A DNA stretch of 64,000 nt from assembly GCA_965240325.2 (NCBI GenBank), contig OZ251225.1:310001-374000 (forward strand), in the 5' to 3' direction. The translations under genes were made by a program, and so were the position numbers. Positions 1 to 56,828 of the stretch are shown here, one piece after another (positions within the stretch are counted from its first letter, which is position 1; every line of letters starts with the position of its first letter). The notes under the pieces are model-generated. The model did not search any database. It was given only the letters and a program-made list of their open reading frames with translations, and was not told the origin of the DNA. Source of the stretch: Rebecca billardiae RCC1528. Lineage: Eukaryota; Protista; Haptophyta.

Positions 1-2
1 GG

Positions 3-1834: not shown

Positions 1835-1885
<51 letters not shown>

Positions 1886-26746: not shown

Positions 26747-26795
26747 CTACACGGTGACCGAACAACAAAGACGGCGCGCAGTTTGGCCGTCAGCC

Positions 26796-29700: not shown

Positions 29701-31667
29701 GCGGGGCGGGCGCGCGCGTGCGCACGCCCCCCTCAGCGCACGGCGCGGCCGACGACTGGCTCGCGCCCGCACCAGCCGCCGCCGCGCGCGCGGCGCCGTC
29801 CGGCGTGGAGCGCGGCACGTACACGACCCCGGAGCAGCTGCCGCCCTCGCCGCCCCGCCCGCCCGACGACGCCGACGTGGATCGCGAGGCGGCATGGCGC
29901 GCGTGGCTTGCACAGCTCGAGGGCGCGCAACGTCGGGCGCTGCTGTCAGCTCTCGGTGCCGCCGAGGGCGCGGCCGAGCCGCGCGCGCCGACGGGGGCGG
30001 CGGCGCGGCTGGCGGCAGCCGCGGCGGGCGCGCCAGCGGCGGCGCCGCGGCCCGCAGTGCTCGCGCCGCCGGCCGCAGCGCCGCGCACCCCGCCGGCGCC
30101 AGCCTCGCCCCGCTCAGACGCCCGCTCGGTCGGCAGCAGCAACGCCTCCTCTGCCGGGGTGCTCGCGTTCGCCCGGGTCGGCGTCGCCGCGACCACCGCT
30201 CGGCGCGTGAGCCGAGCGCTGTACCTGTGGGTGGCGCATGCGCGCGCTCGCGCGATGGTGAGCGACGTGGGGCAGCTGGCCGCCACGCGCCGGCTCGCGC
30301 ACGGCTTCGATCGGCTGCGTGCGCTCGCCGCCGCTGCCGCCACACGCTCAACCCAGCTGCCGAGCACGCGCGCCGCCGAGCGAGCTCCGTCCAGCCTCGC
30401 AGACGCGCCCAGCCCGCCAGCGGAGGCCCAGGCGGCAGCCGGCGGCACGGCGGCGGATGAGGAGAGCCCTGTGCGCACAGAGCTCTCCAACCACGCGCCA
30501 AACCACGCCGAGCTCGCAAAGGCCATCGTCGCCGACCTGCGCGAGTTCGCCGCCGCCCTCGCGCACGGGCGCCCGGCGCGTGAGGAACGCAAGCCGACCG
30601 AGCTCGCGCAGCCGCTGCCCCCGTTGCCGCGCAGCGCAGCGGCGGATCAGGCGCTCTACTCGGCGCCGCCGCCGCGCGCCTCTCCACCTGCGCCGGCCGC
30701 GCGCACGGCGCGCGTGCGCGACAGCGCGCGCCGCTTGCTGCTCAGGGCGCAGGCGCGCAGCGACGAGGACACGCAGCGCTGGCTGCTGCGCGCGTGGCAC
30801 GCGGCCGTGCAGCGGCGAACCGCGAGCGCGCGCGCAGACGCGCACGCCGCTACTGCCGTGCTCGCGCCGCCCGCGGCCGCTGCGGCCAGCGCGCCTGCAG
30901 CCGGCCAGCCGGTCGTAGCCGCGCCCGAATGCGCCACCGCGGCCTCGCAGACGGAGGAGGCCGCGCCGACGAGCTCGGCGCACCAGCCAGGCCTCGCGCC
31001 CGCAGCGGTGGTCGCAGACCTGAGCGCATTCGCGGACGCCCTCGCGCGAGAGCTCGCGGGCAAGGCCCCGGCCAGGCGCACACAGACAGAGCTCGCTGGC
31101 CGCATGCCGCCGCTGCCGCAGCTGCGCAGCTCGGCACCCGACCAGGCGCTCTTCTCCGCGCCGCCGCCGCCGCATCGTCCGTCGGGGCGGTCGTCGCGCA
31201 GCGCGCGTGCGCTCGAGAGCGCGCGCCGCTTGCTGCAGAGGACGCAGGCGCGCAGCGACGAGGACACGCAGCGCTGGCTGCTGCGCGCGTGGCGCTCCGC
31301 GGTGGAGCAACGCTCCGGCACCAAAGCCGCCGACGCCCATCACCGCCGCGAGCACCTGAGCCGCACGCTCCGGGCGTGGGCCGAGCTCACCGCCCGGAAC
31401 AAGCGCAAGCGCGCGGCCGGGATGGACCTGGCCACCATCGCGGCGCTGCGGCTCGGCAAGCTTGCCGACCAGGACGCGACGGTGCGCGAGCTCCAGCAGC
31501 GGGTGGTGGCGCAGGAAGCGCAGCTGGCCACGCTCAAGCGTTGGTGCCGCACCCAGCGCGACTCGATGCTCCGGCACCAGCTGCCGCTGCTCAAGAACCA
31601 CCCGCTCGCGCTGCAGTGGCTGGGCGAGGGGCACATGGACGACCTCGAGGCGGTCCTAGCCTCCTGA
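26796..31667 (+). CDS. Large Ala/Pro-rich coiled-coil protein with Sfi1-like (L-x3-F/L-x2-W) repeats
   Basis: About 1,620-aa ORF with repeated LRQRCFLHWR, LRRECFARWA, LQREGFARWR, RWLLRAWH and HLSRTLRAWA; 207-bp tandem repeat at about 27890-28330. Confidence 0.65.
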   Translation: MGVDDALQLEAHEATLWRSRAAELAGELAALRANDADAVPRSSPSTSNTVEAAVEALMSSAGANTADADVRRVLAELSGTLKQTAAQADASTDAMRAWRLRAGWLAGELDHRHRLLHDAQLHGSSLAGSKSIAGSSIRSTPSRARPGPGMTDPADRDAEIRTIGAEMADVESEAAGFARIAVHAVYQTIAWRESAARLAAIADELSRERFALEQTRLRAPTDASLRGAPALARASAERDAARALVCARARRAALLSDLQLRQRCFLHWRLLRGVDWAPSAATAAAAAAQLEAERDTARYERDAARGVLCARAVRAARQSVPWLRRECFARWAAAAAASAADAAAEAAARHAAERDAARAVVCARALRAASQSVPQLQREGFARWRLLRGSGAAASAADTAAADGTAAAVAQHVAERDAARAERDAARAVVQARALRAASQSVPQLQREGFARWRLLRGSGAAASAADTAAADGTAAAVAQHVAERDAARAERDAARAVVQARALRAASQSMPQLLHELLMRWRLQLLRGRLSGAEPPSAAAAANERAAAVQRRLDVAVRTLRAAQAEVEMSRARARTAQTGSVLRLWTGASAAASAGHAFQVWAAAVAQPSAHASRAARVSAPDAAVAPSEDLADSSAEPGMGVRPAAVRTQEQPSSPPRPAAAPPMPPVTPISEPALREAGALRAPAPISREEQPTRRPAPTPAPPPAARVAESESLLIPVRHPPRPPASPDEPIVRARPGPPPPAAKAVQTEPAAELGAAERGARLEYGAELAARPEPSSPLGAAAPEAAGSSGWGAVPTARAAGATRGEAGAPAQSCAPGASVSPAASPGSSAAPAAHALGPAPTSALSPARVQLRARGSLAESRRSSSSRRGSNASTASGGAEGAASPAARSSSAADPHDPGAAALAGAGSVAADVASATGGSAPRTPRLSTPAGTPPAPSTPLRSTADEPEPPRTALPPRRGARGAGARVRTPPSAHGAADDWLAPAPAAAARAAPSGVERGTYTTPEQLPPSPPRPPDDADVDREAAWRAWLAQLEGAQRRALLSALGAAEGAAEPRAPTGAAARLAAAAAGAPAAAPRPAVLAPPAAAPRTPPAPASPRSDARSVGSSNASSAGVLAFARVGVAATTARRVSRALYLWVAHARARAMVSDVGQLAATRRLAHGFDRLRALAAAAATRSTQLPSTRAAERAPSSLADAPSPPAEAQAAAGGTAADEESPVRTELSNHAPNHAELAKAIVADLREFAAALAHGRPAREERKPTELAQPLPPLPRSAAADQALYSAPPPRASPPAPAARTARVRDSARRLLLRAQARSDEDTQRWLLRAWHAAVQRRTASARADAHAATAVLAPPAAAAASAPAAGQPVVAAPECATAASQTEEAAPTSSAHQPGLAPAAVVADLSAFADALARELAGKAPARRTQTELAGRMPPLPQLRSSAPDQALFSAPPPPHRPSGRSSRSARALESARRLLQRTQARSDEDTQRWLLRAWRSAVEQRSGTKAADAHHRREHLSRTLRAWAELTARNKRKRAAGMDLATIAALRLGKLADQDATVRELQQRVVAQEAQLATLKRWCRTQRDSMLRHQLPLLKNHPLALQWLGEGHMDDLEAVLAS

Positions 31668-33255: not shown

Positions 33256-33452
33256 TCCTCTTCCTCACCCATAAGTGGGGATGCGGGCGCACGACCAGGC
33301 GGCCGCCATCGTGAGCCAGCCTACTCGGCTTACTGACTATTACTGGAAATATGGTCTCTCCGCCGACCAATGAAAAGGCAGGAGGTGCGGAGTCCCGCGG
33401 CTTAGACGCGCGCGGCGGCGGCCTCCGCAGCGCGTGCAGCCCCGCGAGGAGG

Positions 33453-34761
33453 ATGGCGAAGAAAGAGAAAGGCGCGAAGCCCCAGCAGGCGGAGAAGAAG
33501 AAGGCCAAGTCGCAGAGCGGCGCCCTGCTCTACGCGGCAGCCGCGGCGGCGGTGGCCATCGGTGCCGTGTGGATGGCATCACGAGGTCCATTGGCTCCGA
33601 GCAGCCCACCCAATCCGGCGGCGGCAACGTCACGGCCGGGCCGACCTCCGTCGCCGTCCGGGCCTGATGGGGGCAAAAGGGCGGTGAGCGAGTGCACGGA
33701 CAACTCGCCAGCGTGCCAGCAGTGGGCGAACCTCGGCGAGTGCGAGAAGAACCCAAAGTTTATGCATGTGGAGTGCACAAAGACGTGCGGTGCGTGCAAG
33801 GGCACCAAGGTCGAGCGGCAGTGCCAGGACGACAACGCCGACTGCGAGAGGTGGGCGCTGACGGGGCAGTGCGTGAAGAACTCGGAGTTCATGATGGCCA
33901 ACTGCCGCAAGAGCTGCGGCGTGTGCGGGCCCTTCGGCCCGGCGTGCGAGCGGAAGGGCGCGGCAGCCATCACGCCCGGCGACATCAAGACCACCTTCGA
34001 ACGCGCTGTCGCGGACTTCCCGCAGTATAGCCCGGAGGTCCTGCACACGGATCCGTGGGTCGTCAGATTCGACAACTTCGTCTCCGACGAGGAGGCCGAC
34101 CGCATCATCGAGCTGTGCCAAGAGGCCTTCCAGCGCTCGCTCGCTGGCGACCAGGTGTCGCCCGTGCGCACGAGCACGCAGTGTTGGTGCAACTTCCCCA
34201 AGTGCCTTCAGGACCCGATGCTCATGGCCGTGGAGCAGCGCGTGGCGAACCTCACGCGCGTCCCCGTCACCAACGGCGAGTTCATGCAGGTCGTCAGATA
34301 CGACGAGGGGCAGTTCTGTGCGTCCCCTGCGCACGATGCGCGCGCTGCGCACCACGGCATGCTGCTCATGCGAGTGCGAGTGCGCACGCGCCTGCCCGCG
34401 CACCCGCCCCCGGCCCTTGCCTTCCTCAGACAAGGAGCACCACGACCAGAACTCGGCATCGTGGAGCCCACAGGGGGTGCGCGTCTACACCTTCTTCATG
34501 TACCTGAACGACGTAGAGGAGGGCGGAGAGACCGCGTTCAGCAGGCTCGACCTCAAGGTTCGCCCAAGGAAGGGCTCTGCTATCCTGTGGCCGTCCGTGC
34601 TCGACAGCGACCCGAACGCCACCGAGCCGGGCACCTACCACGCAGCGCTCCCCGTCGGCAAAGGGCTCAAGTACGGCGCCAACCTGTGGTTGCACATGCA
34701 CGACTTCCGCACGCCGTCGTACCACCACTGTCTTTTCACGATGAAGAACACCGTGGAGTGA
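33453..34761 (+). CDS. P4H: Prolyl 4-hydroxylase with two ShKT domains (intron 34318-34429)
   Basis: N-terminal TM; ShKT C..WA..GEC.KNP.FM...C.K.CG.C twice; QVVRYDEGQF|YKEHHD, FMYLNDVEEGGET, HAALPV..GLKY. Confidence 0.93.
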
Positions 34762-35037
34762 GCTGAGCTGAGACTCTCGGCTGGACATCAATCATCATCA
34801 TCTCAATAAACGCCGGTGCTTCGGACCAATAAGTGCGCGAATAAGCTGCGAACCTCGGTGCTTGGAGATGGGCGTGGAAGCCAGCAGGTGCTGGCTGCCG
34901 GCGAACTATGATACGTCAATGTCGTAGCCGTAGTTAGGTACCAGCAGAGTCACTGTCACAGTCTGAGTCCGAATACATTATTACGATTATTATAAGCTAA
35001 CTACTACGACGCGCCATTTTACCCGCCGCCGAGCGCG

Positions 35038-36528
35038 ATGGATACCGCCCGCGTGCTCGGCGCCGGTCTTGCGGCGCTTTCTGGGGTGGTGGCGCTCCAC
35101 CTCATCGGCCGTAGGCTCGCCCGCAGGCAGGATCCCGGCGCGGACATCCCCATCGCGCCGGCTGGCGTCATTGCCACCGTCCGCGCCTTCAGCAACTTCG
35201 ACACGCCCACGTATGCGCTCGGGCTCTGGCACTCGACACGCCCACAAAAATCGGGTCCACTCCCACCGATCTTCCGCGTGCGCTTCCCGGTCTGGGCGCG
35301 GACGTACATGGTGACCGACCCGTCTGACGCTCGCGCAGTGCTCACTTCGCCCCACGTCGACAAGACGTCGACCTACCGCTTCTTCGACATGGTGACGGGC
35401 GGCACGCGCTCGGTGTTCTCGGCGCCATCCGACGTGCACTGGCGCGCCGCGCGCAAGGCGATGGTGCCCGCGTTCCGCGCGGCGCACGTCGAGCGCATGA
35501 ACCGCGTGTGTCTCTCGCACTTCGCGCGCTGGCGCGCCGAGACGCTCGAGCCCGCCGTCTCCAGCGGCGCGCCCCTCGACATCTGCGACGAGCTGATCAT
35601 GCTCACGATCGGCATCATCTGCGAGGCGGGCTTTGGGTACGCGGTGAGCGCAGACGAGGCGCGGGGGTTCCTGCGCGACCTCGAGCTCACGATCACGGAG
35701 GGGCGGCTTCAGCAGGTGCCGCTGCGCTGGCTCGCCGCGCCGCTGCTTCCCGCGGCGCGCGAGGCCCGCCGCGCCTCCGAGCGCAACGTCGCGTTCGCGC
35801 GCCGCATCCTCGACGCGTACCGGCACGCTCCGGAGCCCGTCCGCGCCGCGCACGCGCGCGACGAGACGCTCGTCTCGATGGTCGCCGAGAGCCGCGCGTA
35901 CGAGACGGAGCGCGCGCGCTGCGCCGACATGATCACGCTCCTCTTCGCCGGGCACGACACCACGGCGCTCAGCATCGCCTGGGCCCTGGTCGACCTCGCC
36001 CAGCGGCCCGCGGAGCAGGCGGCGCTGCGCGCGGCGCTGCGCCGCTCGGCCGAGCCGACGCGCGCGCCCGAGCTGCTCGCGGTGGTGAAGGAGAGCATGC
36101 GGCTCAACCCGGTGGCGGCGATGGGCTCGTTCCGCCGCACCGCGGTGGAGCTCAGCCTTCCATCCGGCCACAAGGTCGCGGCGGGCTCGTGGCTGCTGAT
36201 GCCGTACTACCTCATCCACAGGGGCGGCCAGATCGACGAGCCCGAGGAGTTCCGCCCCTCGCGCTGGGCGGCGCACCCCGAGGCGCAGGCGGCGGGGCGC
36301 GGCGTGCCGCGCAAGGACGAGGGCGCCAAGGCGCCGCTCACGCTCCCGTTCGCCGCGGGCCCTCGCAACTGCGTTGGCCAGGCGCTCGCCTACGCCGAGC
36401 TGCACGCCGTCCTCGCCAGCCTGTGCGCAGAGTACGAGTTTGAGCTGAGCGCGCAGCCCACGCCCTACTACAACCTGACCTGGCGGCCGAAAGGGGCGAT
36501 GCTTCGCGTGCGCCACGCGCTCGCGTGA
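35038..36528 (+). CDS. Cytochrome P450 (intronless)
   Basis: FAGHDTT, KESMR, FRPSRW and heme motif PFAAGPRNCVG. Confidence 0.96.
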   Translation: MDTARVLGAGLAALSGVVALHLIGRRLARRQDPGADIPIAPAGVIATVRAFSNFDTPTYALGLWHSTRPQKSGPLPPIFRVRFPVWARTYMVTDPSDARAVLTSPHVDKTSTYRFFDMVTGGTRSVFSAPSDVHWRAARKAMVPAFRAAHVERMNRVCLSHFARWRAETLEPAVSSGAPLDICDELIMLTIGIICEAGFGYAVSADEARGFLRDLELTITEGRLQQVPLRWLAAPLLPAAREARRASERNVAFARRILDAYRHAPEPVRAAHARDETLVSMVAESRAYETERARCADMITLLFAGHDTTALSIAWALVDLAQRPAEQAALRAALRRSAEPTRAPELLAVVKESMRLNPVAAMGSFRRTAVELSLPSGHKVAAGSWLLMPYYLIHRGGQIDEPEEFRPSRWAAHPEAQAAGRGVPRKDEGAKAPLTLPFAAGPRNCVGQALAYAELHAVLASLCAEYEFELSAQPTPYYNLTWRPKGAMLRVRHALA

Positions 36529-42044: not shown

Positions 42045-45000
42045 TCAGGCACGGCGCCGAGTCGAGCGCCGAGTCGGCATCGGCTCCTCCTCGGCGCGCT
42101 TGGCTGCCGGCTTGGCGGCCGGCTTGGCAGCCGCTTCGGACGTGCTCGCCGTCGCGCGCTGCCGGGCGGCACGCCGCTTGGGCGGCTGCTCGGACTCGGG
42201 CTCGGGCTCGGCCGCCGCAGCCGATGGCGCCGCCTCGGCCACCTCGGTGCTGGCGGCCGCACGGCCACGCTTCGGGCGAGCTGCGGGCGCGGGCGCCGCG
42301 GGCTCGGCAGCGGCCTTGGCCGCCGGTGCCGCCCGAGTGCGCGTCGCGCGCGCGCGGGCAGAGCGAGCCTTTGGAGCTGCCTCCTCCTCGGCCGGCTCGG
42401 GCGCGGCAGCCTCCTCGGCCGGCGAGGGCTCTGGTGCTGCCGTCGGCTCCACGGCCGCGCGCTCGGCGGCCGCAGGGGCCGCCTGGGCAGCGTGCGACGG
42501 CTCGCCCTCGACCGCGGCCGCCTTGGGCGCGTCTGTGCGCGCTGCTTCGGCCGTTGGCGCGTCGGCATGCTCCTCAGCCGGTGCAGCCATCTCCGGAGCC
42601 GCCGCGGGCTCAGCCACCGCAACGGGCTCAGGCTGAGCGGCCACACTCTCGGCCGGCGCCTCGGCCGCGGCGCCCACCGACGCCGCGGCTGCCCGCTCGG
42701 CCGCGGCCGCGGGCTCGGCCGCGGTGTCCGCGCACGCCTGCGCGCCGGCCGTCGACTCGGCCGCCTCCTCCGCCGCCGGCGCCGAGACGACGACGGTCCG
42801 CAGCGGCGAGCCGCGCACCGAGCCGCGATCGAGCCGCTTGAAGAGCACCTCCTGCTTGGCAGTCACGAGCCCGCCTGCAAACGAGACGCGCCGGCAGTTG
42901 CGCTTCTGCTTGGTCGCGCCCTGGGCGGCTGCGGGCTGCGCGCTGCTCGGGCCGGCTGTCTGCGCGGAGCCGTCTGCAGCTGCCGCGGTCGTCGAGTCGG
43001 GCGCGGCCGTCCGCTCGGCCTCGGGCGTCGCCTCGGCGGCGGCCGGGCGCTTGCGCCCGCGCGTCTGGCGCGTGGCGCGCGTGGCAGGCGCCGAGCTCGC
43101 CACCTCGGCCGTCTTGCGCGTCTGCCGGCGCGCGCGAGTCGTCGCCGCGCTCTCTGCCGCCGGAGCCTCTTCGTGCTCGGGCGCGTCGCCCGTCTGCGCC
43201 TCCGCGGGCGGCTTCGGCTTCTGTGCCGCCTCCGCCGACTCCGCCTGCGAGCGCGTGGGGGAGGCCGAGCTCGGGGGCGCGTCCGCCGTAGCGCTCACAC
43301 CAACCTCAGCCTCGAGCACGGCGTCAGCAGGCGCCGCCGCCTCGTCGGCCGCGTCGGCCATGTCGGCCGCATCAGCAGGTGGCGGTGCCGCGTCGGCCGC
43401 GCCGGCCGCGTCGGCCGCATCCGCCGCGTCGGCGGCGGTGGTCTTGATCGGCTGCGCGGCCTCCTCCTCCGGCTTGGCCTCTTCGAGCGTGGCCGTGGGC
43501 TCGGGCGCGGTGGCCAGCTCCGCGCCCTGCGAGGGCAGCTCCTCCGCGGCCGCGGGCGCCTGCGCCGAGCCCTCGCCCCCCTCCGCCGCCGCCGGCTCGG
43601 GCTGGGCGTGTGAGCGCGGCGTGGCGTGCGCGGCTGCCTCCAGCGCCGCTGCGACCGCCGTCGCGTTGCACCCGTCGGCCTGCGCCGGAGGCGCGGCGGC
43701 GACGGGCGAGGGGTGCTCGAGCGCGCCGCCTGCCGGCACCGCAGTCGGCTTGTGTGCCGCGTCGGCAGCGGCCGCGTCGGCACTGCCCACGCCCGCCTTC
43801 GCCGCGCCGCTTGCACCGGGCGTGAGCGACTGCTTGCGCGTCGTGCGGCACGTCGCTGCCGAGCCGAGCGCGCCCGTCGAGGGTGCGCGCGACGAGCGCA
43901 ACTCGTGCGCTTGCACCTGCGCCAGCAGTGCGCAGCACGGGGCGGGCGGGGCGGGGCGCGCACGGTGTGAGATGGAGGCGAGAGCACGCGCCGCGCCGCG
44001 CGCACGCTCGCGCGTGAACACGCGCGCTCGCGCTCGCGCGTGTCGGCGCGTGCGCGCACGTGAGCCTGGGCGCTCGGCGGTGCCGGCTGGTCCTTCACGG
44101 CTGAGCCGCCCGCGGCCGCGGCATCAGCCGGGTGCGGAGCGGGCGTGACGGAGGGTACGGCGGGCGTGCCACGCGCCGACGCGCGCGTGCCGGGAGTGCG
44201 CGCGGCCGAGCCGAGCCCACTGCACGGCAGCGCGCGCGACGCGGAAGGAAGCGCAGCAGTCGCGGGCGCGGTCGCGGGATGTGTGAGCGCACAGCTCAGC
44301 AGGGGAGCAGCGCGCACGCTCGGCCGGCCTCGCTCCACATGCGGGCGCGTGCGCACGGGGCGCGCGTGCGCACCTGCCAGACGTCACGTGCGCTGCGTGG
44401 CGCACGCTGGTCGTCGACGCGCCGCCGATGCTCGGGCGCGCGCCTGCTGGCGCCGCGGGCCCGCTCTCATCGACGAGGCTGGGGAACGGCTGCGCCGACG
44501 GCGGCTGCGCCTGCTCCGGCTGCGAGCCGTCCGTGGCGTCTGCGCGCGGCTGGACGATGAAGGTGGCGCGGCACTCGTACGAGCTGGCGCCTGGGGTGTA
44601 CGCGCCGAGCACGATGCGCACGCTGCGCGCGGGCGGAGCGGGATGGGCGGGATGGGGCGCGCGAGTCAGTCGTCTCACGCAGCGCGCGCGGACGCGCGCG
44701 CCCGCGCGCGCCAGTCGACACCATCTCACGGCGCGCGCGCTGAACGGTGCGAGCGAGGCGCGCACCGGACGTCTGCGCCCGCGTGCGCGGGCGACTCGGC
44801 CGCGAGCTGGCGCCCGTCGCTACAGCGCGTCACCGACGTCGGGTCCTCACTGGCCTGCGGCAGGGCCACAGCCTCGATCGGCACCGGCGTGCCGTGCGCG
44901 GACATGGCCTCGACAGCGCCGTGCGCGCCTGTGGACGGAGCCGCGGCGATGCTGCCCAGCAGCTCGATGGCGGCCGCCGTCGCCGCCGGGCCCTCCGCCG

Positions 45001-48000
45001 GCGTGGCCGGAGACTCCGCGGGGCCGCTCGCGCGCGGGACGGTGTCCAGATTGAGCAGCTCGCTCGGCGTGAAGGTGCCCTTGACGCTCGCGCGAGCGCT
45101 GTGCGGCGCCGACGGCTGCGCGGGCGTGAAGCGGCCGAGCAGCGTGAACGACTGCGGCACGGCCGAGCCCGGCGTGAAGGCAGGGCGCGCGGCCGAGCCG
45201 AGCGCCGGCGTCTGCGCCGAGAGGGCGCACATGCCCACCACGCTCTGCCGCCGGCTCTCGTCCTCCTCGCCGCCGAGCGCCGCAGGCAGCCGCGAGAGCG
45301 CGCCCTCCGCCCCGATGGGCTCAAAGAGGGGCACAGGCGGCACAGGCGGGCGGGAGTCGCGCGCCGCCGCCGCGGATGAGGGCAGCTCGTCGGCGCGGAT
45401 GAGGCCGGGCGTGCCGACAGCTGCCGGCAGCATGGCGCATGGCGCCGCGAGGTCCATGGCCACCGAGTCGAAGAGCGGCGCGGGGCTCTCGGGCAGCATG
45501 CGCCCGCCGAACACGTCGGGCACGGAGCGCGCGCCGCTCCCAGAGGCTGACGCGCTACCGTCATCCCGGCCGGCCGCCTCGGGCGCAACGGCTGCGCTCT
45601 TCTCCGGTGGCGGCGTCTCGCGCTCGTCCTCGCGGCGCCAGGTGAACACCTGGCCACCGACGACGCACACTCGCGGCTCCGAGCCGACGTGCGTCGGCGT
45701 CGGCCCCGGGGCGTCGACCGCCATCTCCTCAGCGGCTGCTGGCACTTCGTCTGCCGGAGGCGAGTCGGCCGCCTCGGCTGACGCGACCGGCTCAACTGCA
45801 GCCGAGTGCGGCGTGGCCGCAGCGGGCGCACTCGGCGGTGCGCGCTTGACCGAGTTGGCGAGATCGTCGTCCGTCGGCGCAGGCGGGGCCGGCGTCTTCG
45901 CCACCAGCGGCGACGCCTTGACGGCCGAGCGCGTCGAAGCTGAGCCGCGCTTGACCGAGCCCGCGATGTCCACGCCCGGCGCGTTGACCGCGGCCGGCGT
46001 CTGCGCCGCCGGCGTGCGCACGCGCTTGACCGAGTTGGCAAGATCGTCGTCCGTCGGCGCAGGCGGGGCCGGCGTCTTGGCGGCGAGAGGTGTCGCCTTG
46101 ACGGCCGAGAAGGCCGCCGCCGAGCCGCGCTTGACCGAGCCGGCGATGTCCACGCCCGGCGCGTTGACCGCCGCCGGCGTCTGCGCCGCCGGCGTGCGCA
46201 CGCGCTTGACCGAGTTGGCGAGATCGTCGTCCGTCGGCGCAGGCGGGGCCGGCGTCTTGGCGGCGAGAGGTGTCGCCTTGACGGCCGAGCCGGCCGCCGC
46301 CGAGCCGCGCTTGACCGAGCCGGCGATGTCCACGCCCGGCGCGTTGACCGCCGCCGGCGTCTGCGCCGCCGGCGTGCGCACGCGCTTGACCGAGTTGGCG
46401 AGATCGTCGTCCGTCGGCGCAGGCGGGGCCGGCGTCTTGGCGGCGAGTGGTGTCGCCTTGACGGCCGAGCCGGCCGCCGCCGAGCCGCGCTTGACCGAGC
46501 CGGCGATGTCCACGCCCGGCGCGTTGACCGCCGCCGGCGTCGCCGGCGTGCGCACGCGCTTGACCGAGTTGGCAAGATCGTCGTCCGTCGGCGCAGGCGG
46601 AGCCGGCGTCTTGGCGGCGAGAGGTGTCGCCTTGACGGCCGAGCCGGCCGCCGCCGAGCCGCGCTTGACCGAGCCCGCGATGTCCACGCCCGGCGCGTTG
46701 ACCGCGGCCAGCGTCTGCGCCGCCGGCGTGCGCACGCGCTTGACCGAGTTGGCGAGATCGTCGTCCGACGGCGCAGGCGGGGCCGGCGTCTTCGCCACCA
46801 GCGGCGACGCCTTGACGGCCGAGCCGGCTGCCGCCGAGCCGCGCTTGACCGAGCCCGCGATGTCCACGCCCGGCGCGTTGACCGCGGCCGGCGTCTGCGC
46901 CGCCGGCGTGCGCACGCGCTTGACCGAGTTGGCGAGATCGTCGTCCGTCGGCGCAGGCGGGGCCGGCGTCTTCGCCACCAGCGGCGACGCCTTGACGGCC
47001 GAGCCGGCCGCCGCCGAGCCGCGCTTGACCGAGCCCGCGATGTCCACGCCCGGCGCGTTGACCGCGGCCGGCGTCTGCGCCGCCGGCGTGCGCACGCGCT
47101 TGACCGAGTTGGCGAGATCGTCGTCCGTCGGCGCAGGCGGGGCCGGCGTCTTCGCCACCAGCGGCGACGCCTTGACGGCCGAGCCGGCCGCCGCCGAGCC
47201 GCGCTTGACCGAGCCCGCGATGTCCACGCCCGGCGCGTTGACCGCCGCCGGCGTCTGCGCCGCCGGCGTGCGCACGCGCTTGACCGAGTTGGCGAGATCG
47301 TCGTCCGTCGGCGCAGGCGGAGCCGGCGTCTTGGCGGCGAGAGGTGTCGCCTTGACGGCCGAGCCGGCCGCCGCCGAGCTGCGCTTGACCGAGCCCGCGA
47401 TGTCCACGCCCGGCGCGTTGACCGCCGCCGGCGTCTGCGCCGCCGGCGTGCGCACGCGCTTGACCGAGTTGGCGAGATCGTCGTCCGTCGGCGCAGGCGG
47501 AGCCGGCGTCTTGGCGGCGAGAGGTGTCGCCTTGACGGCCGAGCCGGCTGCCGCCGAGCCGCGCTTGACCGAGCCCGCGATGTCCACGCCCGGCGCGTTG
47601 ACCGCGGCCGGCGTCTGCGCCGCCGGCGTGCGCACGCGCTTGACCGAGTTGGCGAGATCGTCGTCCGTCGGCGCAGGCGGGGCCGGCGTCTTCGCCACCA
47701 GCGGCGACGCCTTGACGGCCGAGCCGGCCGCCGCCGAGCCGCGCTTGACCGAGCCCGCGATGTCCACGCCCGGCGCGTTGACCGCCGCCGGCGTCTGCGC
47801 CGCCGGCGTGCGCACGCGCTTGACCGAGTTGGCGAGATCGTCGTCCGTCGGCGCAGGCGGGGCCGGCGTCTTCGCCACCAGCGGCGACGCCTTGACGGCC
47901 GAGCCGGCCGCCGCCGAGCCGCGCTTGACCGAGCCCGCGATGTCCACGCCCGGCGCGTTGACCGCCGCTGGCGTCTGCGCCGCCGGCGTGCGCACGCGCT

Positions 48001-50778
48001 TGACCGAGTTGGCGAGATCGTCGTCCGTCGGCGCAGGCGGGGCCGGCGTCTTGGCGGCGAGAGGTGTCGCCTTGACGGCCGAGCCGGCCGCCGCCGAGCT
48101 GCGCTTGACCGAGCCCGCGATGTCCACGCCCGGCGCGTTGACCGCCGCTGGCGTCTGCGCCGCCGGCGTGCGCACGCGCTTGACCGAGTTGGCGAGATCG
48201 TCGTCCGTCGGCGCAGGCGGGGCCGGCGTCTTGGCGGCGAGAGGTGTCGCCTTGACGGCCGAGCCGGCCGCCGCCGAGCTGCGCTTGACCGAGCCCGCGA
48301 TGTCCACGCCCGGCGCGTTGACCGCCGCTGGCGTCTGCGCCGCCGGCGTGCGCACGCGCTTGACCGAGTTGGCGAGATCGTCGTCCGTCGGCGCAGGCGG
48401 CCCCGGCGTCTTCGCCACCAGCGGCGACGCCTTGACGGCCGAGCCGGCCGCCGCCGAGCCGCGCTTGACCGAGCCCGCGATGTCCACGCCCGGCGCGTTG
48501 ACCGCCGCCGGCGTCTGCGCCGCCGGCGTTCCCGCGGCCTTGGACGTCGAGTCGGCCGGCTGCTGCTCGCTGGGCTGCGCCGGCGTCGAGCTCACGCCAT
48601 CGAACGCCTTCAGCATGGCCGCCCCCGACACGGTCGGCGTGCTCGCCGAGGGCGGCGTGGCCTGCATCTTGACCGCGTCGGCGGCGGGCGGCTGCGCGAC
48701 CGGCGAGGGCTGGATTGGCTGCATCGCCTGCAGCGCCTTCGCCGCCTGCGCGAGTGGTCCGTACAGCGTCTGGTCGAACGTGATCAGGTTGGGCGATGCC
48801 GACGCATCGCTCCCGCGCCCCGCGGCAGCAGCGCTTTGCACGAGCGGCGAAGCGCTCGGCAGCAGCGGCGACGTGTGCGCGAGCGTCGACGGGTCCTTGA
48901 GGGGCGTCGGCGCGCGCACAGCATCGAGCGCGGCCTGCAGCGCATTGGGCACCGCCGGCTCCGCCGGCGAGGCCTCCTGTGCCGAGGTGACGCCCGCCGA
49001 CGCAGCCGGGCCCGCGCGCGCGCTGCGCACGGTCGGCGTGGCCGCGGACAGCTTGAGCGGGTTCAGCGTCTTGTCCGCCTCGCCGACTGCCGCGGTGGCC
49101 GTCTGCACCATGAAGCGCGAGGCGACCTCGGACGGCGGTGTGCGCGCCGTGCGGCCTTTGCCGCCCGTGCGGCTCGGCGTCGGCTGCGCCGGCTTGCTCG
49201 CCGCCGCCGCCTGCGCCTCGCCCTCATGCTGGTGCAGGCTCGGCTGCGCCGGCCGCGGCGAGGTGCTCGGCACCGCGCTCGGCGCAAGCAGCGGCACCGG
49301 CGACTCGGACGCGCCATTCATGCCCTTGAGCAGGTCGGCGAGATCGATGGTGGCATCGTCCGCGTCGTCCGACTCCTCGTCCTCGGGCTTCGCGTCGGCC
49401 GGCGCGGCCGTCGATACGGGCTGCGCCTCGGGCACACGCTCGCCGCCGGCCGACTTGCGCCGAACGGCTCGGAGCGAGCGCGGCGTCGGCACCGGGCATG
49501 GCGCAGCCGCCGCCGGGATGCCGCTCTCCTTGCGGCTCGACTTGGGCGATGCCTTGGGCGACACCTTGGGTGATGCCTTGCGGCTCGACTTGGGCGATGC
49601 CTTGGGCGATGCCTTGGGCGAAGCCTTGGGTGCGGCGCTTGGAGCTGCCTGCCGCTCGGCGGCGGCAGCCGCGGGCGGCAGCGCTGCCTCTGGGCTCTGC
49701 TCGTCCGAGTTGGCCGGGGACTCCTTGAGCTGCTGCCGGCGCATGGCGAGGGCGGCGCTCAGCTGATCCATGACGCTGGCGTTCTCCGCGACAGGGCCCA
49801 CAGCGCCCGGCGCCGCAGCCGCAGCCCGCGCCGCGCTCGAGCCTGCGCCGACAGCGGCTGCCGCGCCCGCGCCCGCAGCGGGCGCCGAGCCGGCGCCCTT
49901 GGTGGGCGTCGCCTGGTGGCGAGCCTTGATGTGGTCGAGCGCGGTGGTCGAAGCGCGCGCGGAGCCGCTTGACGCGCCCACCGGCACGCCGACGTCCTCG
50001 ACCTGCGCAGCAACGCCGCCGCGAGCTTGGCTCGCCGGGCTGCTGCCGACGGCGGCTGCGCTGCCGCGCGACGGGCTTGGCTTGACGGCAGCGCCGCGCC
50101 CGTTCTCCTGCCCAGCGCGCGCCGCCGCTCCGGCGGAGGCGCGCGGGCAGGCGGCGTCCATGTTGCGATTCCGTCCGCCGTACAGCGGCGATCGCGCCGC
50201 GCCCGCGCCCTTGGCTGAGCGCGGTGAGGACGCGACAGGCGGCGGCGCGGTGCCTGCGCGCGCAGAGCGTGCGGCGCCGCAGGACGCGGGTGCACACGCG
50301 CGCGTGCGTGAGTGAGGCGAGCACGGGCGGCCGCGCACCGTGCTCGCATTCGGTTGCTGCCGACGCGTAGGGGTGATCACTCGCGCGCGCGTCGCAGACC
50401 GGTACCTTCGATGATGAAGCGGAATTTGCGGCCGCAGACGTGCATCTCGTCGTTGTTGGACACGCGCGTGCGGCCCGCGACAGGCTCGCCGTTGAGGTGC
50501 GTCGCGTCCTGCCGGACGGTGAGATTGTCCAGCCACACGCTGCCCGTCTCATCAATGGTCACCTGCACGTGCTTGGCGTCGACATCGGGCAGCCTGATGC
50601 ACACGTCGCACTGCACCTCGTCGCGTCCGATCGTGAGCTTGCCGTCGATGGGCATCTTGCTGCCCGGCTCGCCGCTTTTTTTGATGTGCGTGATCCAGCA
50701 GCGCGGCACAGCATCGTCAGAGGCGCCATGGCGAGAGGCCGGCACCGGCGCGGCGCGAGCTCGCGGGCTCTCCATCAT
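42045..50778 (-). CDS. Ki-67-like FHA/tandem-repeat protein, about 2,713 aa; exons 50778-50406, 50253-44766, 44622-44374, 44219-44060, 43916-42045
   Basis: Exon 1 encodes the FHA (WITHIKKSGEPG...TIGR...CDVCIRLPDVDAKH...THLNG...CGRKFRF). Four phase-consistent GT-AG introns join the ORF-track pieces into 8142 nt. 15x60-aa repeats; RRVSF motif. Confidence 0.8.
45840..48528 (-). repeat. Coding tandem array, 15 x 180 bp (one unit 174 bp)
   Basis: Unit marker cgcgcttgaccgagttggc recurs at 45841, 46021, 46201, 46381, 46555 ... 48355. Confidence 0.95.
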
Positions 50779-51072
50779 GCTCGCTCTCTTCACGTGCGTG
50801 GGCAAGGGCCGTCTCGGGCTCCACCCTGGCTTGCACAGCAAGGTTTTTGAATTGATTGAGCGTTACGGGTACTCCGGCCATGCGAATTCGGGATCCGGGA
50901 GTTGTTCATCGAGCGCGCCCGGACCAAGCCTCGGAAAGCGCTGGCCAACGACCAAGACGCTCACTCTCAACTCGCGCGGCTGGCGTTGCTCGCCACAGTG
51001 CGACTCAAGCGACGGGTGGCCAGCGGAGGGTGAAAGGGCGGGAGCGCCGGGGCGACGACTGGGCAGATCGCG

Positions 51073-51630
51073 ATGAAGGATGTGCACCGCGCGCTCGTGC
51101 AGCGGCTCATGACGGCTGGCGCGCTGACAGAGGATCAGCTGCTCTCAGCCTACGGCGACCTCATGCGGGGCTATGGCGAGCAACTCAGCGGCGCGCTCAA
51201 CCGCGCGGCGCTCGACAAGGCCATCTCCGTCGTGAATACCCAGCTGGACTTCTTCTCGCTCAAGGTGGCGCGGGCTCACTGCGCGGCGGACGGAAAGTTC
51301 TACTACGGCCTCGTGAACTTGCGCCACGACGAGCTCGCGCAGAAGGGTACGCCGCTCACCGAGGCGCAGGTGCTCTTCTTCCAGCGCGTCAAGGAGGAGC
51401 TGGTCGATCGGCAGAAGCGGCAGGAAGGGGAAAGCATCCCGTGGATGGAGGCGGAGAACATGCGGCTCGAGCTGGCGAACAAGCAGAAGCTATCCAGCGA
51501 CGAAGCCAACCAGACGCTCGAGACTCTCGTCGAGCAAATGTGGCTGCACAAGGGCGTGGCCGATGGCGAGGAGGATGACCTGCTGCTCGGACCGCGCAGC
51601 ATCTTGCAGCTGCAGTATGCCGCGGCCTGA
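51073..51630 (+). CDS. NSE1: NSE1 (SMC5/6 non-SMC element 1), winged-helix part only; no RING seen
   Basis: HRALVQRLM..G, AISVVNTQL, YYGLVN, LS..EA..TLETLVEQMWL, LGPRSILQL. Confidence 0.8.
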   Translation: MKDVHRALVQRLMTAGALTEDQLLSAYGDLMRGYGEQLSGALNRAALDKAISVVNTQLDFFSLKVARAHCAADGKFYYGLVNLRHDELAQKGTPLTEAQVLFFQRVKEELVDRQKRQEGESIPWMEAENMRLELANKQKLSSDEANQTLETLVEQMWLHKGVADGEEDDLLLGPRSILQLQYAAA

Positions 51631-55235: not shown

Positions 55236-56828
55236 ATGGAGGCATCATCCGCTCCGACGTGCCGCATGCACTGGTACGGCAACCCGATGTGGTTCGCCGT
55301 GCCGCTCGACGTCAACCTGTGGGAGGTCTTCGGCAAGGGCTGCTTCGTCATGGAGCAGAAGACGCACCGCATCGTGCCAATCGACGGCAGCGGATTCGCG
55401 GCCGCGCCGCTCGAGGCAGGCGGCGTGTACTCGCTGTTCGGCAAGAATGGCTCGAAGCTGATCAAAGAGTGCCACCACCTGCGCAGCCAGCTCGGCCTCG
55501 TGCGCGGCGAGCTGCAGCGCGTGCAGCAGCGCAGCCAGCGCTTCGAGACAGTGACACAAGAGCAGCTGCGCGCGGCGACGACACTGCTGCAGAAGGCTGT
55601 GGACATTGGGCGCGATGGGCGTGGCGCCGACCTGGAGCTGATCGAAGGCGCGATCGGCGCGCTGCAGGTGGCGCAGCGGCGCATCGACGCGGTGCAGCAG
55701 GCGCTCCCGCCGGCCGAGCCGCCGGTCGAGCGCGCTGTGTCTGCCAGTGCCGACGGTGCCGGAGGGCAGGGGGGGGCGAGTGCGGAGGAGGTCGCCGAGG
55801 AGGGGGCACGCGAGGAGCAGCCGCGCGCGCAGGCAGCATCGGGCGAGGAGAGCTCCGCCGAGCGCGCGCAATCGGGCGCAGAGGTGAGCGCCTCCTCCGC
55901 CCCTCTGCCACAGCACGCGAGCGCACCGGCGCCGCCGGACGGAGTGCTCACGGTCGCGGTCACGCAGCGCGGCGGGTGCGCGCGCGGCAAGCCGGACTAC
56001 CCGCACCAGTGGGCGCGTCAGTCGAAGCTGCGCACCCTCGGGAAGGGCGAGCTGATGACGTACGTCCCGGTCGGCTACATCCGCTCGTGCTTCGCCGAGA
56101 AGAACGGCACGCCGCGCCAGGGCTCCGTCTGCCCGGCGTCGCGCGCGAGTCTCGAGCTCAAGCTGCCCAACAACCTGAACGCGCGGCACTCGCTGGATGG
56201 CCTCGAGACGTTCTCGCACGTGTGGCTGCTGTGGCACTTCCACCAAAACGGGCCGGCGTCGATCCGCTCGAAGGTGGCGCCGCCGCGCCTTGACGGCGAG
56301 CGCGTCGGCCTCTTCGCCACGCGCAGCCCGCACCGACCGAACGCAGTCGGGCTCTCGGCGGTGCGGCTCGATCGAATCGAGGGCTCGACGCTGCACCTCT
56401 CGGGCGTCGACCTGATCGATGGAACGCCTGTGCTCGATGTGAAGCCGTACGTGCCGCTCGCGGACAGCCTGCCGCCCGCGGAGGTGCGGGTGCCGTGGTG
56501 GCTTCGACCGGAGACCGCGCCCGTCCACGACCTCGAGGTCGTCATGGAGCCCGGCGCGCGCGAGCAGCTGCGCGCGCTGCAGGCGGCGCTCAACTTCTTC
56601 GCCTCGGCGGACGACGCGGAGGAGGCGATCCGGCAAGTGCTGCGCGCGGACCCGCGGAGCGTCTACTGGCGGCATGCACACTCGGACGAGCAGTACGGTT
56701 TCTCGATCGACCAGCTCAACGTGGTCTGCCGATTCGATGATGGCGGCCGAGCTGTTGTCACCTCGGTACAGCATCTCGCCCTCTCCGACCGCGCGCATCT
56801 GCAGCCGGGAGACAACCGGACCACCTGA
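55236..56828 (+). CDS. TRMO: tRNA m6t6A37 methyltransferase TrmO (TsaA) with a long N-terminal extension
   Basis: VGYIRSCFAEKNGTPRQG, GLETFSHVWLLWHFH, GLFATRSPHRPNAVGLS, GVDLIDGTPVLDVKPY, LRADPRSVY. Confidence 0.94.
   Translation: MEASSAPTCRMHWYGNPMWFAVPLDVNLWEVFGKGCFVMEQKTHRIVPIDGSGFAAAPLEAGGVYSLFGKNGSKLIKECHHLRSQLGLVRGELQRVQQRSQRFETVTQEQLRAATTLLQKAVDIGRDGRGADLELIEGAIGALQVAQRRIDAVQQALPPAEPPVERAVSASADGAGGQGGASAEEVAEEGAREEQPRAQAASGEESSAERAQSGAEVSASSAPLPQHASAPAPPDGVLTVAVTQRGGCARGKPDYPHQWARQSKLRTLGKGELMTYVPVGYIRSCFAEKNGTPRQGSVCPASRASLELKLPNNLNARHSLDGLETFSHVWLLWHFHQNGPASIRSKVAPPRLDGERVGLFATRSPHRPNAVGLSAVRLDRIEGSTLHLSGVDLIDGTPVLDVKPYVPLADSLPPAEVRVPWWLRPETAPVHDLEVVMEPGAREQLRALQAALNFFASADDAEEAIRQVLRADPRSVYWRHAHSDEQYGFSIDQLNVVCRFDDGGRAVVTSVQHLALSDRAHLQPGDNRTT

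What the first reader, a model, noticed from the sequence alone, without database searches (positions are those of the whole stretch)
42045..50778. Ki-67-like giant protein (FHA + CDK-site tandem repeats + RVSF + basic tail) in a non-animal, probably haptophyte, genome
Seen in sequence: five phase-consistent exons give about 2,713 aa. There is an N-terminal FHA, then a disordered region with SPK repeats (KASPKASPKASPKSSRKASPKVSPKASPK), 15 tandem 60-aa repeats, KRNCRRVSFAGG, and a Lys/Arg-rich end (TRRSTRRRA). Established knowledge: vertebrate Ki-67 has an N-terminal FHA, an RVSF PP1-docking site, 16 S/T-P-rich tandem repeats and a basic C-terminal chromatin-binding region, and it coats mitotic chromosomes. 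From memory, this FHA resembles the Ki-67 subtype: IKKSG..G versus IKRSG.DG, CDVCIRLP versus CDIRIQLP, RKFRF versus RSFRY. Inference: this is either a deep homologue or a convergent analogue of Ki-67, and it suggests a perichromosomal-layer/PP1-targeting system in an algal lineage. The ORF track splits the gene into five unrelated pieces, so it is easily missed. One difference from Ki-67: RVSF lies after the repeats, not before them.
Basis: partly seen in the sequence, partly recalled or inferred. Interest (0 to 1): 0.88.

Follow-up and report, generated by a model that had tools for sequence, protein, structure and literature searches.

The report
Ki-67-like chromosome protein gene in alga
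A haptophyte alga carries one large gene for a mostly disordered protein built like the animal proliferation marker Ki-67, which adds an algal member to a recently described, very old family of Ki-67-like proteins.

Summary
On the minus strand, 50778 to 42045, five phase-consistent GT..AG exons give 2,713 aa: an N-terminal FHA, an SPK array, 15 x 60-aa repeats, RRVSF, and a basic end in RRSTRRRA.

No RNA run was listed, so the junctions rest on comparison. A syntenic metagenome orthologue (L001) shares the position and phase of introns 1 and 2, collinear conserved islands, a 76%-identical RVSF island and the identical C-terminal octapeptide.

The FHA is of the Ki-67 type. A profile of the clade hits human Ki-67 FHA at E 7e-14, and the next FHA at 5e-5. 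The FHA tree agrees only weakly (63/65).

Three features differ from Ki-67:
- The phosphothreonine-contact Ser and Asn are Asp.
- The KiR-SLiM flank is not detectable.
- The repeats are not Ki-67 repeats.

New lead: an HMGN-like RRSxR motif starts exactly 8 residues from the C-terminus here, in Tisochrysis and in one other protein.

A June 2026 preprint already describes Ki-67-like proteins in non-vertebrates, including three non-opisthokonts but no haptophyte. This is therefore a new member of a known kind. Its function (chromatin-tethered, PP1-docking, phospho-regulated scaffold) is inferred, not shown.

The scan had noted the repeat array of this same stretch before (s1-346578), not on other DNA.

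The parts
50406..50778 (-). Exon 1: start codon, about 25 aa leader and the FHA domain (aa 26-124 = 50407-50703). It ends in phase 1 after FRFIIE.
   Evidence: Pfam FHA E 5.6e-7. Best PDB hit is Ki-67. The AlphaFold model has pLDDT 93.6 and 1R21/2AFF rank top. The start Met aligns with P0001 and P0002.
50254..50405 (-). Intron 1 (152 nt, GT..AG, phase 1).
   Evidence: Frame switch in GC3. L001 has an intron at the same codon and phase (FRFTIQ G|GTGCGC ... GCGCAG|GC). RSPLxGGRNR is conserved just downstream in the spliced frame.
44766..50253 (-). Exon 2 (about 1,829 aa): disordered region with the SPK array, conserved short motifs, the 15-unit repeat array and a post-repeat conserved region.
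   Evidence: GC3 is 0.84-0.98 in frame 0. Collinear tblastn islands with L001: aa 498-679, the repeats, and aa 1702-1941 at E 1e-13.
49529..49633 (-). SPK array (eight S-P-K motifs). It is not conserved in L001.
48749..48796 (-). Conserved linear motif SPNLITFDQTLYGPLA (16 of 16 residues identical in L001).
45841..48529 (-). 15 tandem 180-nt (60-aa) repeats, each with four S/T-P sites (RTP, QTP, A[TS]P, KTP) and a DDDLANSVKR motif.
   Evidence: TRF. Unit list and codon-position bias 6/3/14. The L001 unit of about 57 aa keeps KTPA, DDLAxSxKR, QTPA and DIxGS.
44623..44765 (-). Intron 2 (143 nt).
   Evidence: Donor GTCCG|GTGCG and acceptor CAG|CGTGCGC are both conserved in L001.
44374..44622 (-). 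Exon 3 (83 aa; SYECRATF motif).
   Evidence: GC3 in frame 2. Weak collinear match to L001 AFECEATF...PFPPL (E 0.03).
44220..44373 (-). Intron 3 (154 nt).
   Evidence: Phase-consistent GT..AG. The equivalent intron in L001 was not resolved.
44060..44219 (-). Exon 4 (53 aa; GTRAS motif). An alternative donor at 44099 would give a 2,700-aa protein.
   Evidence: In L001, GTRAS lies 6 aa from GSAATCRT, which is in exon 5 of the window.
43917..44059 (-). Intron 4 (143 nt).
   Evidence: The motifs on either side of it are contiguous in L001.
42045..43916 (-). Exon 5 (623 aa plus stop): GSAATCRT motif, acidic Ala-rich stretch, RVSF island and basic tail.
42807..42905 (-). PP1-docking island KRNCRRVSFAGGLVTAKQEVLFKRLDRGSVRGS (RRVSF = 42879-42893).
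   Evidence: It is the only match in the protein to [RK]x0-1[VI]{P}[FW]. It is 76% identical over 33 aa in L001 while the surroundings are about 25-35%.
42048..42071 (-). C-terminal octapeptide RRSTRRRA, an HMGN-like RRSxR motif, at the end of a 113-aa tail of pI 11.5.
   Evidence: It is identical in L001. It is the only RR[ST]xR in 2,713 aa and starts 8 residues from the end. Tisochrysis (RRSARSRS) and P0079 (RRSARLRK) have the motif at the same position. The HMGN, Dsup and Dot5 motifs are described in PMC13347269.
50779..51072 (.). 294-bp divergent promoter shared with Nse1. It holds a CHR-like TTTGAA at 50846-50851.

Best explanation
This is one five-exon gene of a Pavlovophyceae-like haptophyte. 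It encodes a protein of about 2,700 aa that is roughly 95% disordered and belongs to the family of Ki-67-like proteins.

Shown:
- The N-terminal FHA is of the Ki-67 subtype.
- The gene ends (FHA, RVSF island, C-terminal octapeptide) and two intron positions are conserved in a syntenic orthologue.
- The repeats are under coding constraint that preserves the S/T-P sites.

Inferred mechanism:
- The extreme C-terminal HMGN-like RRSxR motif, in a basic tail, tethers the protein to nucleosomes or chromatin.
- The long chain carries 113 proline-directed sites, about 60 of them in the repeat array. Mitotic kinases phosphorylate it, turning a nearly neutral chain (net +20) strongly negative.
- RRVSF docks PP1. 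Because it sits in an Aurora-type RRxS context, phosphorylation could switch the docking off until mitotic exit.
- The FHA recruits a partner. Its phosphate-contact Ser and Asn are Asp, so binding may not depend on phosphothreonine.

Together this would make a chromatin-anchored, phospho-switchable PP1 scaffold that works like Ki-67.
For: Gene model:
- GC3 phase, a stop-free 2,713-aa splice model with uniform 143-154-nt introns, and conserved start.
- In L001, Nse1 lies head to head as in the window.
- Intron 1 has the same position and phase, with RSPLxGGRNR downstream.
- The donor and acceptor of intron 2 are conserved.
- The exon 4 and exon 5 motifs are contiguous in L001, and the C-terminus is identical.
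- Tisochrysis P0012 is one 1,746-aa ORF with an N-terminal Ki-67-type FHA, RVSF motifs and RRSAR at position -8.

FHA subtype:
- PDB search by sequence and by profile, Foldseek, and fish Ki-67 proteins among the hits.

Ki-67 feature list of the preprint:
- pI 9.0, one S/T-P per 24 aa, repeats, and one PP1 motif.

RVSF island conservation.

Repeat constraint.

HMGN-like motif biology: PMC13347269.
Against: - No transcript evidence exists: no RNA run was listed.
- The FHA tree supports the Ki-67-like grouping only at 63/65.
- The canonical Ser and Asn of the phosphothreonine pocket are Asp, and Asp or Glu in the two orthologues.
- The flank after RVSF does not match the Ki-67 KiR-SLiM.
- Pfam does not detect K167R or PP1_bind.
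- There is no sequence similarity to any hit outside the FHA.
- Overall charge is only mildly basic, with long acidic stretches before the tail.
- Location, PP1 binding and nucleosome binding are all untested.
Confidence: 0.6

Rival explanations
1. Convergent analogue. Only the FHA is related to the Ki-67 FHA, or merely similar to it. The disordered body, the repeats, RVSF and the basic tail were assembled independently. The protein may do a different nuclear job, for example nucleolar or ribosome-biogenesis scaffolding or DNA-damage signalling in the manner of MDC1 (FHA plus phospho-repeats).
For: - No detectable homology outside the FHA.
- KiR-SLiM is not matched.
- RVSF lies after the repeats.
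- The phosphothreonine pocket is altered.
- Tree support is weak.
- RVxF and basic tails are short and evolve easily.
Against: - The same three modules (N-terminal Ki-67-type FHA, RVxF, Arg-rich extreme C-terminus) recur in the Tisochrysis protein. Fish Ki-67 proteins share the FHA, a KRVSF motif and an RRxR-type end.
- The MDC1 FHA scores E 0.1 against 7e-14 for Ki-67, and there is no BRCT.
- The preprint finds that disordered regions of accepted Ki-67 homologues also lack sequence similarity.
Confidence: 0.25
2. Mis-joined model. The FHA exon, the repeat ORF and the RVSF ORF are two or three neighbouring genes, and the splice model is an artefact of long open frames in 77% GC DNA.
For: - No RNA evidence.
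- High GC gives long ORFs in all frames.
- Introns 3 and 4 lack direct comparative confirmation of their exact sites.
- An in-frame Met lies about 25 aa into exon 2.
Against: - Intron position and phase are conserved at junctions 1 and 2.
- Conserved islands are collinear on one strand.
- The motifs that flank intron 4 are contiguous in L001.
- The N-terminal and C-terminal modules are identical in the orthologue and occur in the single-ORF Tisochrysis protein.
- Intron lengths and splice motifs are uniform.
Confidence: 0.07
3. NIPP1-type regulator. NIPP1 (PPP1R8) is the widespread eukaryotic protein that combines an FHA with an RVxF motif, and this gene would be an expanded version of it.
For: FHA and RVxF occur in one protein. 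The preprint notes that plant NIPP1-like proteins surface in Ki-67 FHA searches.
Against: - The NIPP1 FHA (2JPE) is absent from the PDB hits of the window FHA and of its clade profile at E up to 10.
- Size, repeats and tail are unlike NIPP1.
Confidence: 0.03

Closest known systems
Vertebrate Ki-67 (MKI67)
   Same: - N-terminal FHA of the same subtype (best PDB hit, 28-29% identity, TM 0.84-0.91).
- A very long disordered chain.
- About 15-16 tandem repeats rich in S/T-P.
- One S/T-P per roughly 24 aa, as in fish Ki-67.
- An RVSF PP1 motif followed by G/A-G-x-L.
- Basic pI.
- An Arg-rich extreme C-terminus (fish proteins end in TRRGRAAKK or VRRTRQK).
   Different: - RVSF lies after the repeats.
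- No detectable KiR-SLiM.
- The repeats are 60 aa and unrelated in sequence to the 122-aa Ki-67 repeat.
- The phosphothreonine-contact Ser and Asn are Asp.
- Long acidic stretches give a net charge of only +20.
- The spacing in the C-terminal motif is RRSxR rather than RRxR.
Non-vertebrate Ki-67-like proteins (Haider et al., bioRxiv 10.64898/2026.06.18.733134)
   Same: It meets their working criteria: N-terminal Ki-67-type FHA, large disordered protein, PP1 motif (C-terminal in some of their cases), basic pI, repeats, and dense S/T-P sites whose phosphorylation would reverse the charge. Their set already includes the non-opisthokonts Thecamonas, Dictyostelium and Hondaea.
   Different: No haptophyte or alga is in their set, and they conclude there is likely no homologue in plants. 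The conserved C-terminal RRSxR motif and the altered FHA pocket are not described there.
Tisochrysis lutea FHA protein (P0012/P0155, EukProt EP00967)
   Same: It is a haptophyte protein with an N-terminal Ki-67-type FHA (Ki-67 at 4.5e-12 against 0.017 for the next hit), RVSF motifs, one S/T-P per 31 aa, and RRSARSRS starting 8 residues from the end.
   Different: - It is 1,746 aa with no tandem repeats detected.
- The FHA is only 38% identical.
- It keeps the canonical Ser and Asn.
- Its precomputed Pfam hits include a SAP domain.
HMGN / Dsup / Dot5 nucleosome-binding motif (RRSARLSA)
   Same: The RRSxR core, whose three arginines are required for binding the nucleosome acidic patch (PMC13347269). 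The window has RRSTR, and P0079 has RRSARL.
   Different: Here the motif is the extreme C-terminus of a giant protein. Thr replaces Ala or Ser. Binding has not been tested.
KNL1-type Aurora-gated RVSF motifs (from general knowledge)
   Same: RRVSF followed by a small residue. This matches the R-R-x-S Aurora B consensus, which in known mitotic PP1 regulators blocks PP1 docking when phosphorylated.
   Different: This comparison comes from memory and was not tested here. There is no other similarity.

Membership tests
Ki-67 / Ki-67-like proteins | N-terminal FHA of the Ki-67 subtype | tested here: met
   - phmmer against PDB: Ki-67 at 1.7e-6, other FHAs at 0.5 or worse.
- Clade profile: 7e-14 against 5e-5.
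- Foldseek top two hits are 1R21 and 2AFF.
- The ML tree puts the clade on the Ki-67-like side, but only at 63/65.
Ki-67 / Ki-67-like proteins | Canonical FHA phosphothreonine-binding residues (G, R, S, H, N, N) | tested here: not met
   G51, R52, H70 and N96 are kept. The Ser position is D67 and the loop Asn position is D91. P0001 and P0002 have Glu or Asp at both positions.
Ki-67 / Ki-67-like proteins | PP1-docking RVxF motif [RK]x0-1[VI]{P}[FW] | tested here: met
   A single match, RRVSF, at aa 2432. It lies in an island that is 76% identical in the orthologue.
Ki-67 / RepoMan | KiR-SLiM extension after RVxF (Pfam PP1_bind) | tested here: not met
   No Pfam hit. An HMM of the fish Ki-67 flank scores 0.6 bits, and 503 of 5,000 shuffles score as high.
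Ki-67 | Ki-67 repeats (Pfam K167R) | tested here: not met
   No Pfam hit in the repeat region. The 15 x 60-aa array is analogous but of unrelated sequence.
Ki-67 / Ki-67-like proteins | Large, mostly disordered, basic protein with dense S/T-P sites | tested here: met
   2,713 aa, pI 9.0, 113 S/T-P sites (1 per 24 aa). Outside the FHA, 84% of residues are disorder-promoting. No dedicated disorder predictor was run.
Ki-67 | C-terminal chromatin-binding (LR) domain | tested here: inconclusive
   The last 113 aa have pI 11.5 and end in a conserved RRSTRRRA. Fish Ki-67 proteins end in RRxR..K. No alignment to the LR domain was obtained.
Ki-67 | Coats mitotic chromosomes, is cell-cycle regulated, and binds NIFK and PP1 | not testable with these tools
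   These need experiments. The only hint is a CHR-like promoter element.
NIPP1 (PPP1R8) | NIPP1-type FHA | tested here: not met
   2JPE is absent from the hits at E up to 10.
MDC1 | MDC1-type FHA plus C-terminal tandem BRCT | tested here: not met
   The MDC1 FHA scores E 0.096 against 7e-14 for Ki-67. Pfam finds no BRCT.

The most novel reading that the evidence does not exclude
Ki-67-like proteins are a pan-eukaryotic, possibly LECA-age family defined by three modules in fixed order: an N-terminal Ki-67-type FHA, an RVxF PP1 dock, and an extreme C-terminal arginine-anchor motif. The C-terminal motif is HMGN-like RRSxR in haptophytes and RRxR in fish. It would tether the chain to the nucleosome acidic patch. 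The Pavlovophyceae-like lineage would additionally have converted the FHA phosphate pocket to an acidic one, meaning a switch to phospho-independent partner binding.
Probability: 0.3. Interest if true: 0.8.

Novelty: new member of a known kind. Interest (0 to 1): 0.55.

Why it matters
Ki-67 was long thought to be restricted to vertebrates. A 2026 preprint extends it to invertebrates, fungi and three protists, and denies it to plants.

This gene and its relatives found here extend that range further:
- Tisochrysis (haptophyte).
- Amorphochlora (Rhizaria).
- A Mucochytrium-like labyrinthulomycete.
- More weakly, the green alga Prototheca.

These place the Ki-67-type FHA with a long disordered chain in haptophytes and other Diaphoretickes. 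That favours an ancient origin for a chromosome-surface or PP1-targeting scaffold.

The gene also gives two concrete, testable hypotheses:
- A conserved C-terminal HMGN-like motif is the chromatin anchor.
- RRVSF is an Aurora-gated PP1 dock.

In addition, it offers a natural variant in which the FHA phosphate pocket is acidic.

Tried and rejected
- RNA evidence: the look-up of sequencing runs listed no run.
- More orthologous loci: the metagenome scan with the FHA alignment confirmed no relative.
- The search for homologous proteins with exon-2 residues 373-554 found nothing. With the Tisochrysis FHA it found only itself. Its length window and word index limit both searches.
- KiR-SLiM homology: an eye-catching match (RVSF-GGxL...LF.KRL...SPLR) proved not significant and was dropped.
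- Pfam on the four non-FHA pieces: nothing real. The 0.044 hit to Binary_toxB_2 is noise.
- ESM Atlas features say only generic bacterial FHA and do not discriminate.
- The first AlphaFold model, from 3 sequences, was too weak (pLDDT 63) and was replaced. That model's alignment contains fish Ki-67, so the Foldseek ranking is supportive only.
- The FHA trees cannot resolve the deep split, with only 105 columns.
- The exact sites of the L001 equivalent of intron 3 could not be fixed: my first guess was out of phase.
- NIPP1 and MDC1 readings were rejected.
- A gene on the plus strand (ORF 44145-49766) was rejected on GC3 phase, codon-position bias and cross-species protein conservation.
Full report

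Yes. The region is 75-80% GC, so long ORFs occur in every frame. The GC content of the third codon position singles out the minus strand. It picks frame 1 for 50800-50400, frame 0 (GC3 0.84-0.98) from about 50250 to 44800, and then frames 2, 0 and 2.

Joining 50778-50406, 50253-44766, 44622-44374, 44219-44060 and 43916-42045 at GT..AG sites gives a stop-free CDS of 2,713 aa. The introns are 152, 143, 154 and 143 nt and share splice motifs (G|GTGCGC ... GCAG|). An alternative donor at 44098 would remove 13 aa.

Pfam finds only FHA, in exon 1. TRF finds 15.0 copies of a 180-nt unit at 45841-48529.

Among the repeat copies, the variable columns fall 6, 3 and 14 at codon positions 1, 2 and 3. The two repeat subtypes differ by ACA/TCG, a Thr/Ser swap that keeps an S/T-P site. 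The array is therefore translated in this frame and selected.

**2. Are the five pieces one gene?**

No RNA run was listed, so I used comparison. The closest FHA relatives in 1.8 billion representative proteins are two metagenome proteins, P0001 and P0002, at 53-54% identity. P0002 lies on a 21-kb ENA contig, fetched as L001.

- **Synteny.** L001 is syntenic with the window. An Nse1 gene (PF07574) lies head to head with the FHA gene in both.
- **Collinear islands.** tblastn with composition correction gives collinear islands on one strand: FHA (47%), aa 498-679 (including SPNLITFDQTLYGPLA, 16 of 16 identical), the repeat unit, aa 1702-1941 (E 1e-13), and the RVSF island (25 of 33 identical).
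- **Intron 1.** It sits at the same codon and phase in L001 (FRFTIQ G|GTGCGC ... GCGCAG|GC). The next exon carries RSPLxGGRNR in the spliced frame in both species.
- **Intron 2.** Its donor (GTCCG|GTGCG) and acceptor (CAG|CGTGCGC) are conserved.
- **Exons 3 to 5.** Exon 3 has a weak counterpart (SYECRATF against AFECEATF). The GTRAS motif of exon 4 and the GSAATCRT motif of exon 5 are 6 aa apart in a single L001 exon. Both proteins end in RRSTRRRA followed by the stop.
- **Assembly gap.** L001 has a 100-N scaffold gap inside its repeat array, so its copy number is unknown.
- **Independent support.** The Tisochrysis lutea protein P0012/P0155 is one 1,746-aa ORF on a 5.5-kb contig. It has the FHA at the N-terminus, RVSF motifs, and RRSARSRS at the C-terminus.

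I put the single-gene model at about 0.9. The exact sites of introns 3 and 4 are less certain.

**3. What kind of FHA is it?**

- **Sequence against PDB.** The exon-1 protein hits human Ki-67 FHA (2AFF, 1R21) at E 1.7e-6. Rad53 FHA1 and Dun1 score 0.6-0.8.
- **Profile against PDB.** A profile of the window plus P0001 and P0002 hits Ki-67 at 7e-14 (55 bits). The next FHA scores 5e-5 (26 bits), MDC1 scores 0.1, and NIPP1 does not appear.
- **Structure.** A high-confidence model (pLDDT 93.6) has 1R21 and 2AFF as its top Foldseek hits (TM 0.84-0.91, rmsd 1.6-1.8). Other FHAs follow closely, and the alignment used for the model included fish Ki-67.
- **Database hits.** Among the 292 significant hits are many fish Ki-67 proteins (FHA at residues 7-97, KRVSFGG motif) and invertebrate FHA giants.
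- **Tree.** In an ML tree of 88 FHA domains, the window clade (100/100) falls on the Ki-67-like side of the main split, but with only 63/65 support. The tree is consistent with the assignment and does not decide it.
- **Other lineages.** The same PDB test gives Ki-67 as the clear best hit for Tisochrysis (4.5e-12 against 0.017), Amorphochlora (6e-13 against 4e-3) and P0031, which groups with the Mucochytrium protein P0011 in the FHA tree (1e-16 against 6e-4). The result for Prototheca is weaker (9e-7 against 1e-4).

One real difference emerged. Of the conserved G, R, S, H, N, N residues (named in the preprint), the Ser before His and the loop Asn are both Asp here (VDAKH and RQDATHLNG). In P0001 and P0002 they are Glu or Asp. 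This lineage has made the phosphate pocket acidic, so canonical phosphothreonine binding is doubtful.

**4. The rest of the protein**

The protein has pI 9.0 and net charge +20. It carries 113 S/T-P sites, one per 24 aa, with four per repeat unit. There is one PP1 motif, RRVSF, at aa 2432. The last 113 aa have pI 11.5. Outside the FHA, 84% of residues are disorder-promoting.

The RVSF island is by far the best-conserved non-FHA segment between the two species. This argues that it is functional. The motif sits in an R-R-x-S context, the Aurora type, which is a judgement from general knowledge. The similarity of its flank to the Ki-67/RepoMan KiR-SLiM is not significant.

RR[ST]xR occurs once in the 2,713 aa, starting 8 residues from the end. 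The same is true of Tisochrysis, and P0079 has its last copy at the same position. The background rate is 1.4e-4 per residue. Fish Ki-67 proteins end in a related RRxR..K.

RRSxR is the core of the HMGN, Dsup and Dot5 motif. In that motif the three arginines are needed to bind the nucleosome acidic patch (PMC13347269). I therefore propose the C-terminus as the chromatin anchor. This is inference.

**5. Organism**

A P450 gene at 35038-36525 has its best named hits in Diacronema lutheri (41%) and Pavlovales sp. CCMP2436 (35%). The organism is therefore a haptophyte near the Pavlovophyceae. It is apparently not represented in the protein collections.

**6. Comparison with what is known**

Established Ki-67 biology is reviewed in PMC8354752:
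- The FHA binds NIFK.
- The C-terminal LR domain binds chromosomes.
- The protein forms a brush-like surfactant layer.
- PP1 is recruited for mitotic exit.

Preprint 10.64898/2026.06.18.733134 reports Ki-67-like proteins in many invertebrates, in fungi, and in Thecamonas, Dictyostelium and Hondaea. It lists the same criteria used here, notes C-terminal PP1 motifs in some species, and concludes there is likely no homologue in plants. It mentions no haptophyte.

This gene is thus a new member of a known kind. It has three particular features:
- The altered FHA pocket.
- A very regular 15 x 60 phospho-repeat array.
- The conserved HMGN-like end.

**7. Verdict**

- Best explanation (confidence 0.6): a chromatin-tethered, phospho-switchable, PP1-docking scaffold homologous to Ki-67-like proteins.
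- Main rival (0.25): a convergent assembly around a related FHA.
- Interest is 0.55.

Noticed in passing
window 50846-50851; L001 9975-9999: A CHR-like TTTGAA lies 68 bp upstream of the ATG, in the 294-bp promoter shared with Nse1. There are only 7 distinct TTYGAA sites in the 64 kb. In L001 the 30 bp before the ATG read TTTCAAA...TTTGAATTCGAA. This could be a conserved G2/M-type promoter element.
   Followed up: partly
window 51073-51630 (+): An Nse1 (SMC5/6 subunit, PF07574, E 2.5e-23) gene lies head to head with the FHA gene. The same arrangement occurs in L001 (9338-9919 minus strand against 10001 plus strand).
   Followed up: partly
P0077 (Prototheca wickerhamii KAK2079884.1, 990 aa): This green-algal protein has an N-terminal FHA whose best PDB hit is Ki-67 (9e-7 against 1e-4) and an Arg-rich end (TRASRRR). 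It bears on the preprint's statement that plants likely lack a homologue.
   Followed up: partly
P0012 (Tisochrysis lutea) and P0067: The precomputed Pfam hits for P0012 list a SAP domain (PF02037) beside the FHA. P0067 ends in a SAP-like sequence. Some family members may carry an extra DNA-binding module that the window's protein lacks.
   Followed up: no
fish Ki-67 proteins P0066, P0073, P0107, P0116, P0122 and others: All end in [TVP]RR[GAT]R..K(K) within the last 9 residues. This Arg-rich extreme C-terminus resembles the haptophyte RRSxR end, but with one residue less between the arginines.
   Followed up: partly
L001 12361-12460: A 100-N scaffold gap falls inside the orthologue's repeat array, so its copy number is unknown. 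The gap causes an apparent frame shift.
   Followed up: yes
window 26739-31667 (+) and 1-4000: Other stretches of 78-81% GC carry very long ORFs (for example 1,642 aa). They may be further Ala/Pro-rich disordered-protein genes.
   Followed up: no
window 33351-34763 (+), 35038-36525 (+), 55236-56825 (+): Neighbouring genes are a ShK-domain protein, a cytochrome P450 (used here for taxonomy) and a TrmO tRNA methyltransferase.
   Followed up: partly
window aa 1702-1715 (about 45480-45525): VPDVFGGRMLPESP faintly resembles the Ki-67 motif sPELFDKrLPPdsP. PDVF is conserved in L001, but the match is not significant.
   Followed up: partly
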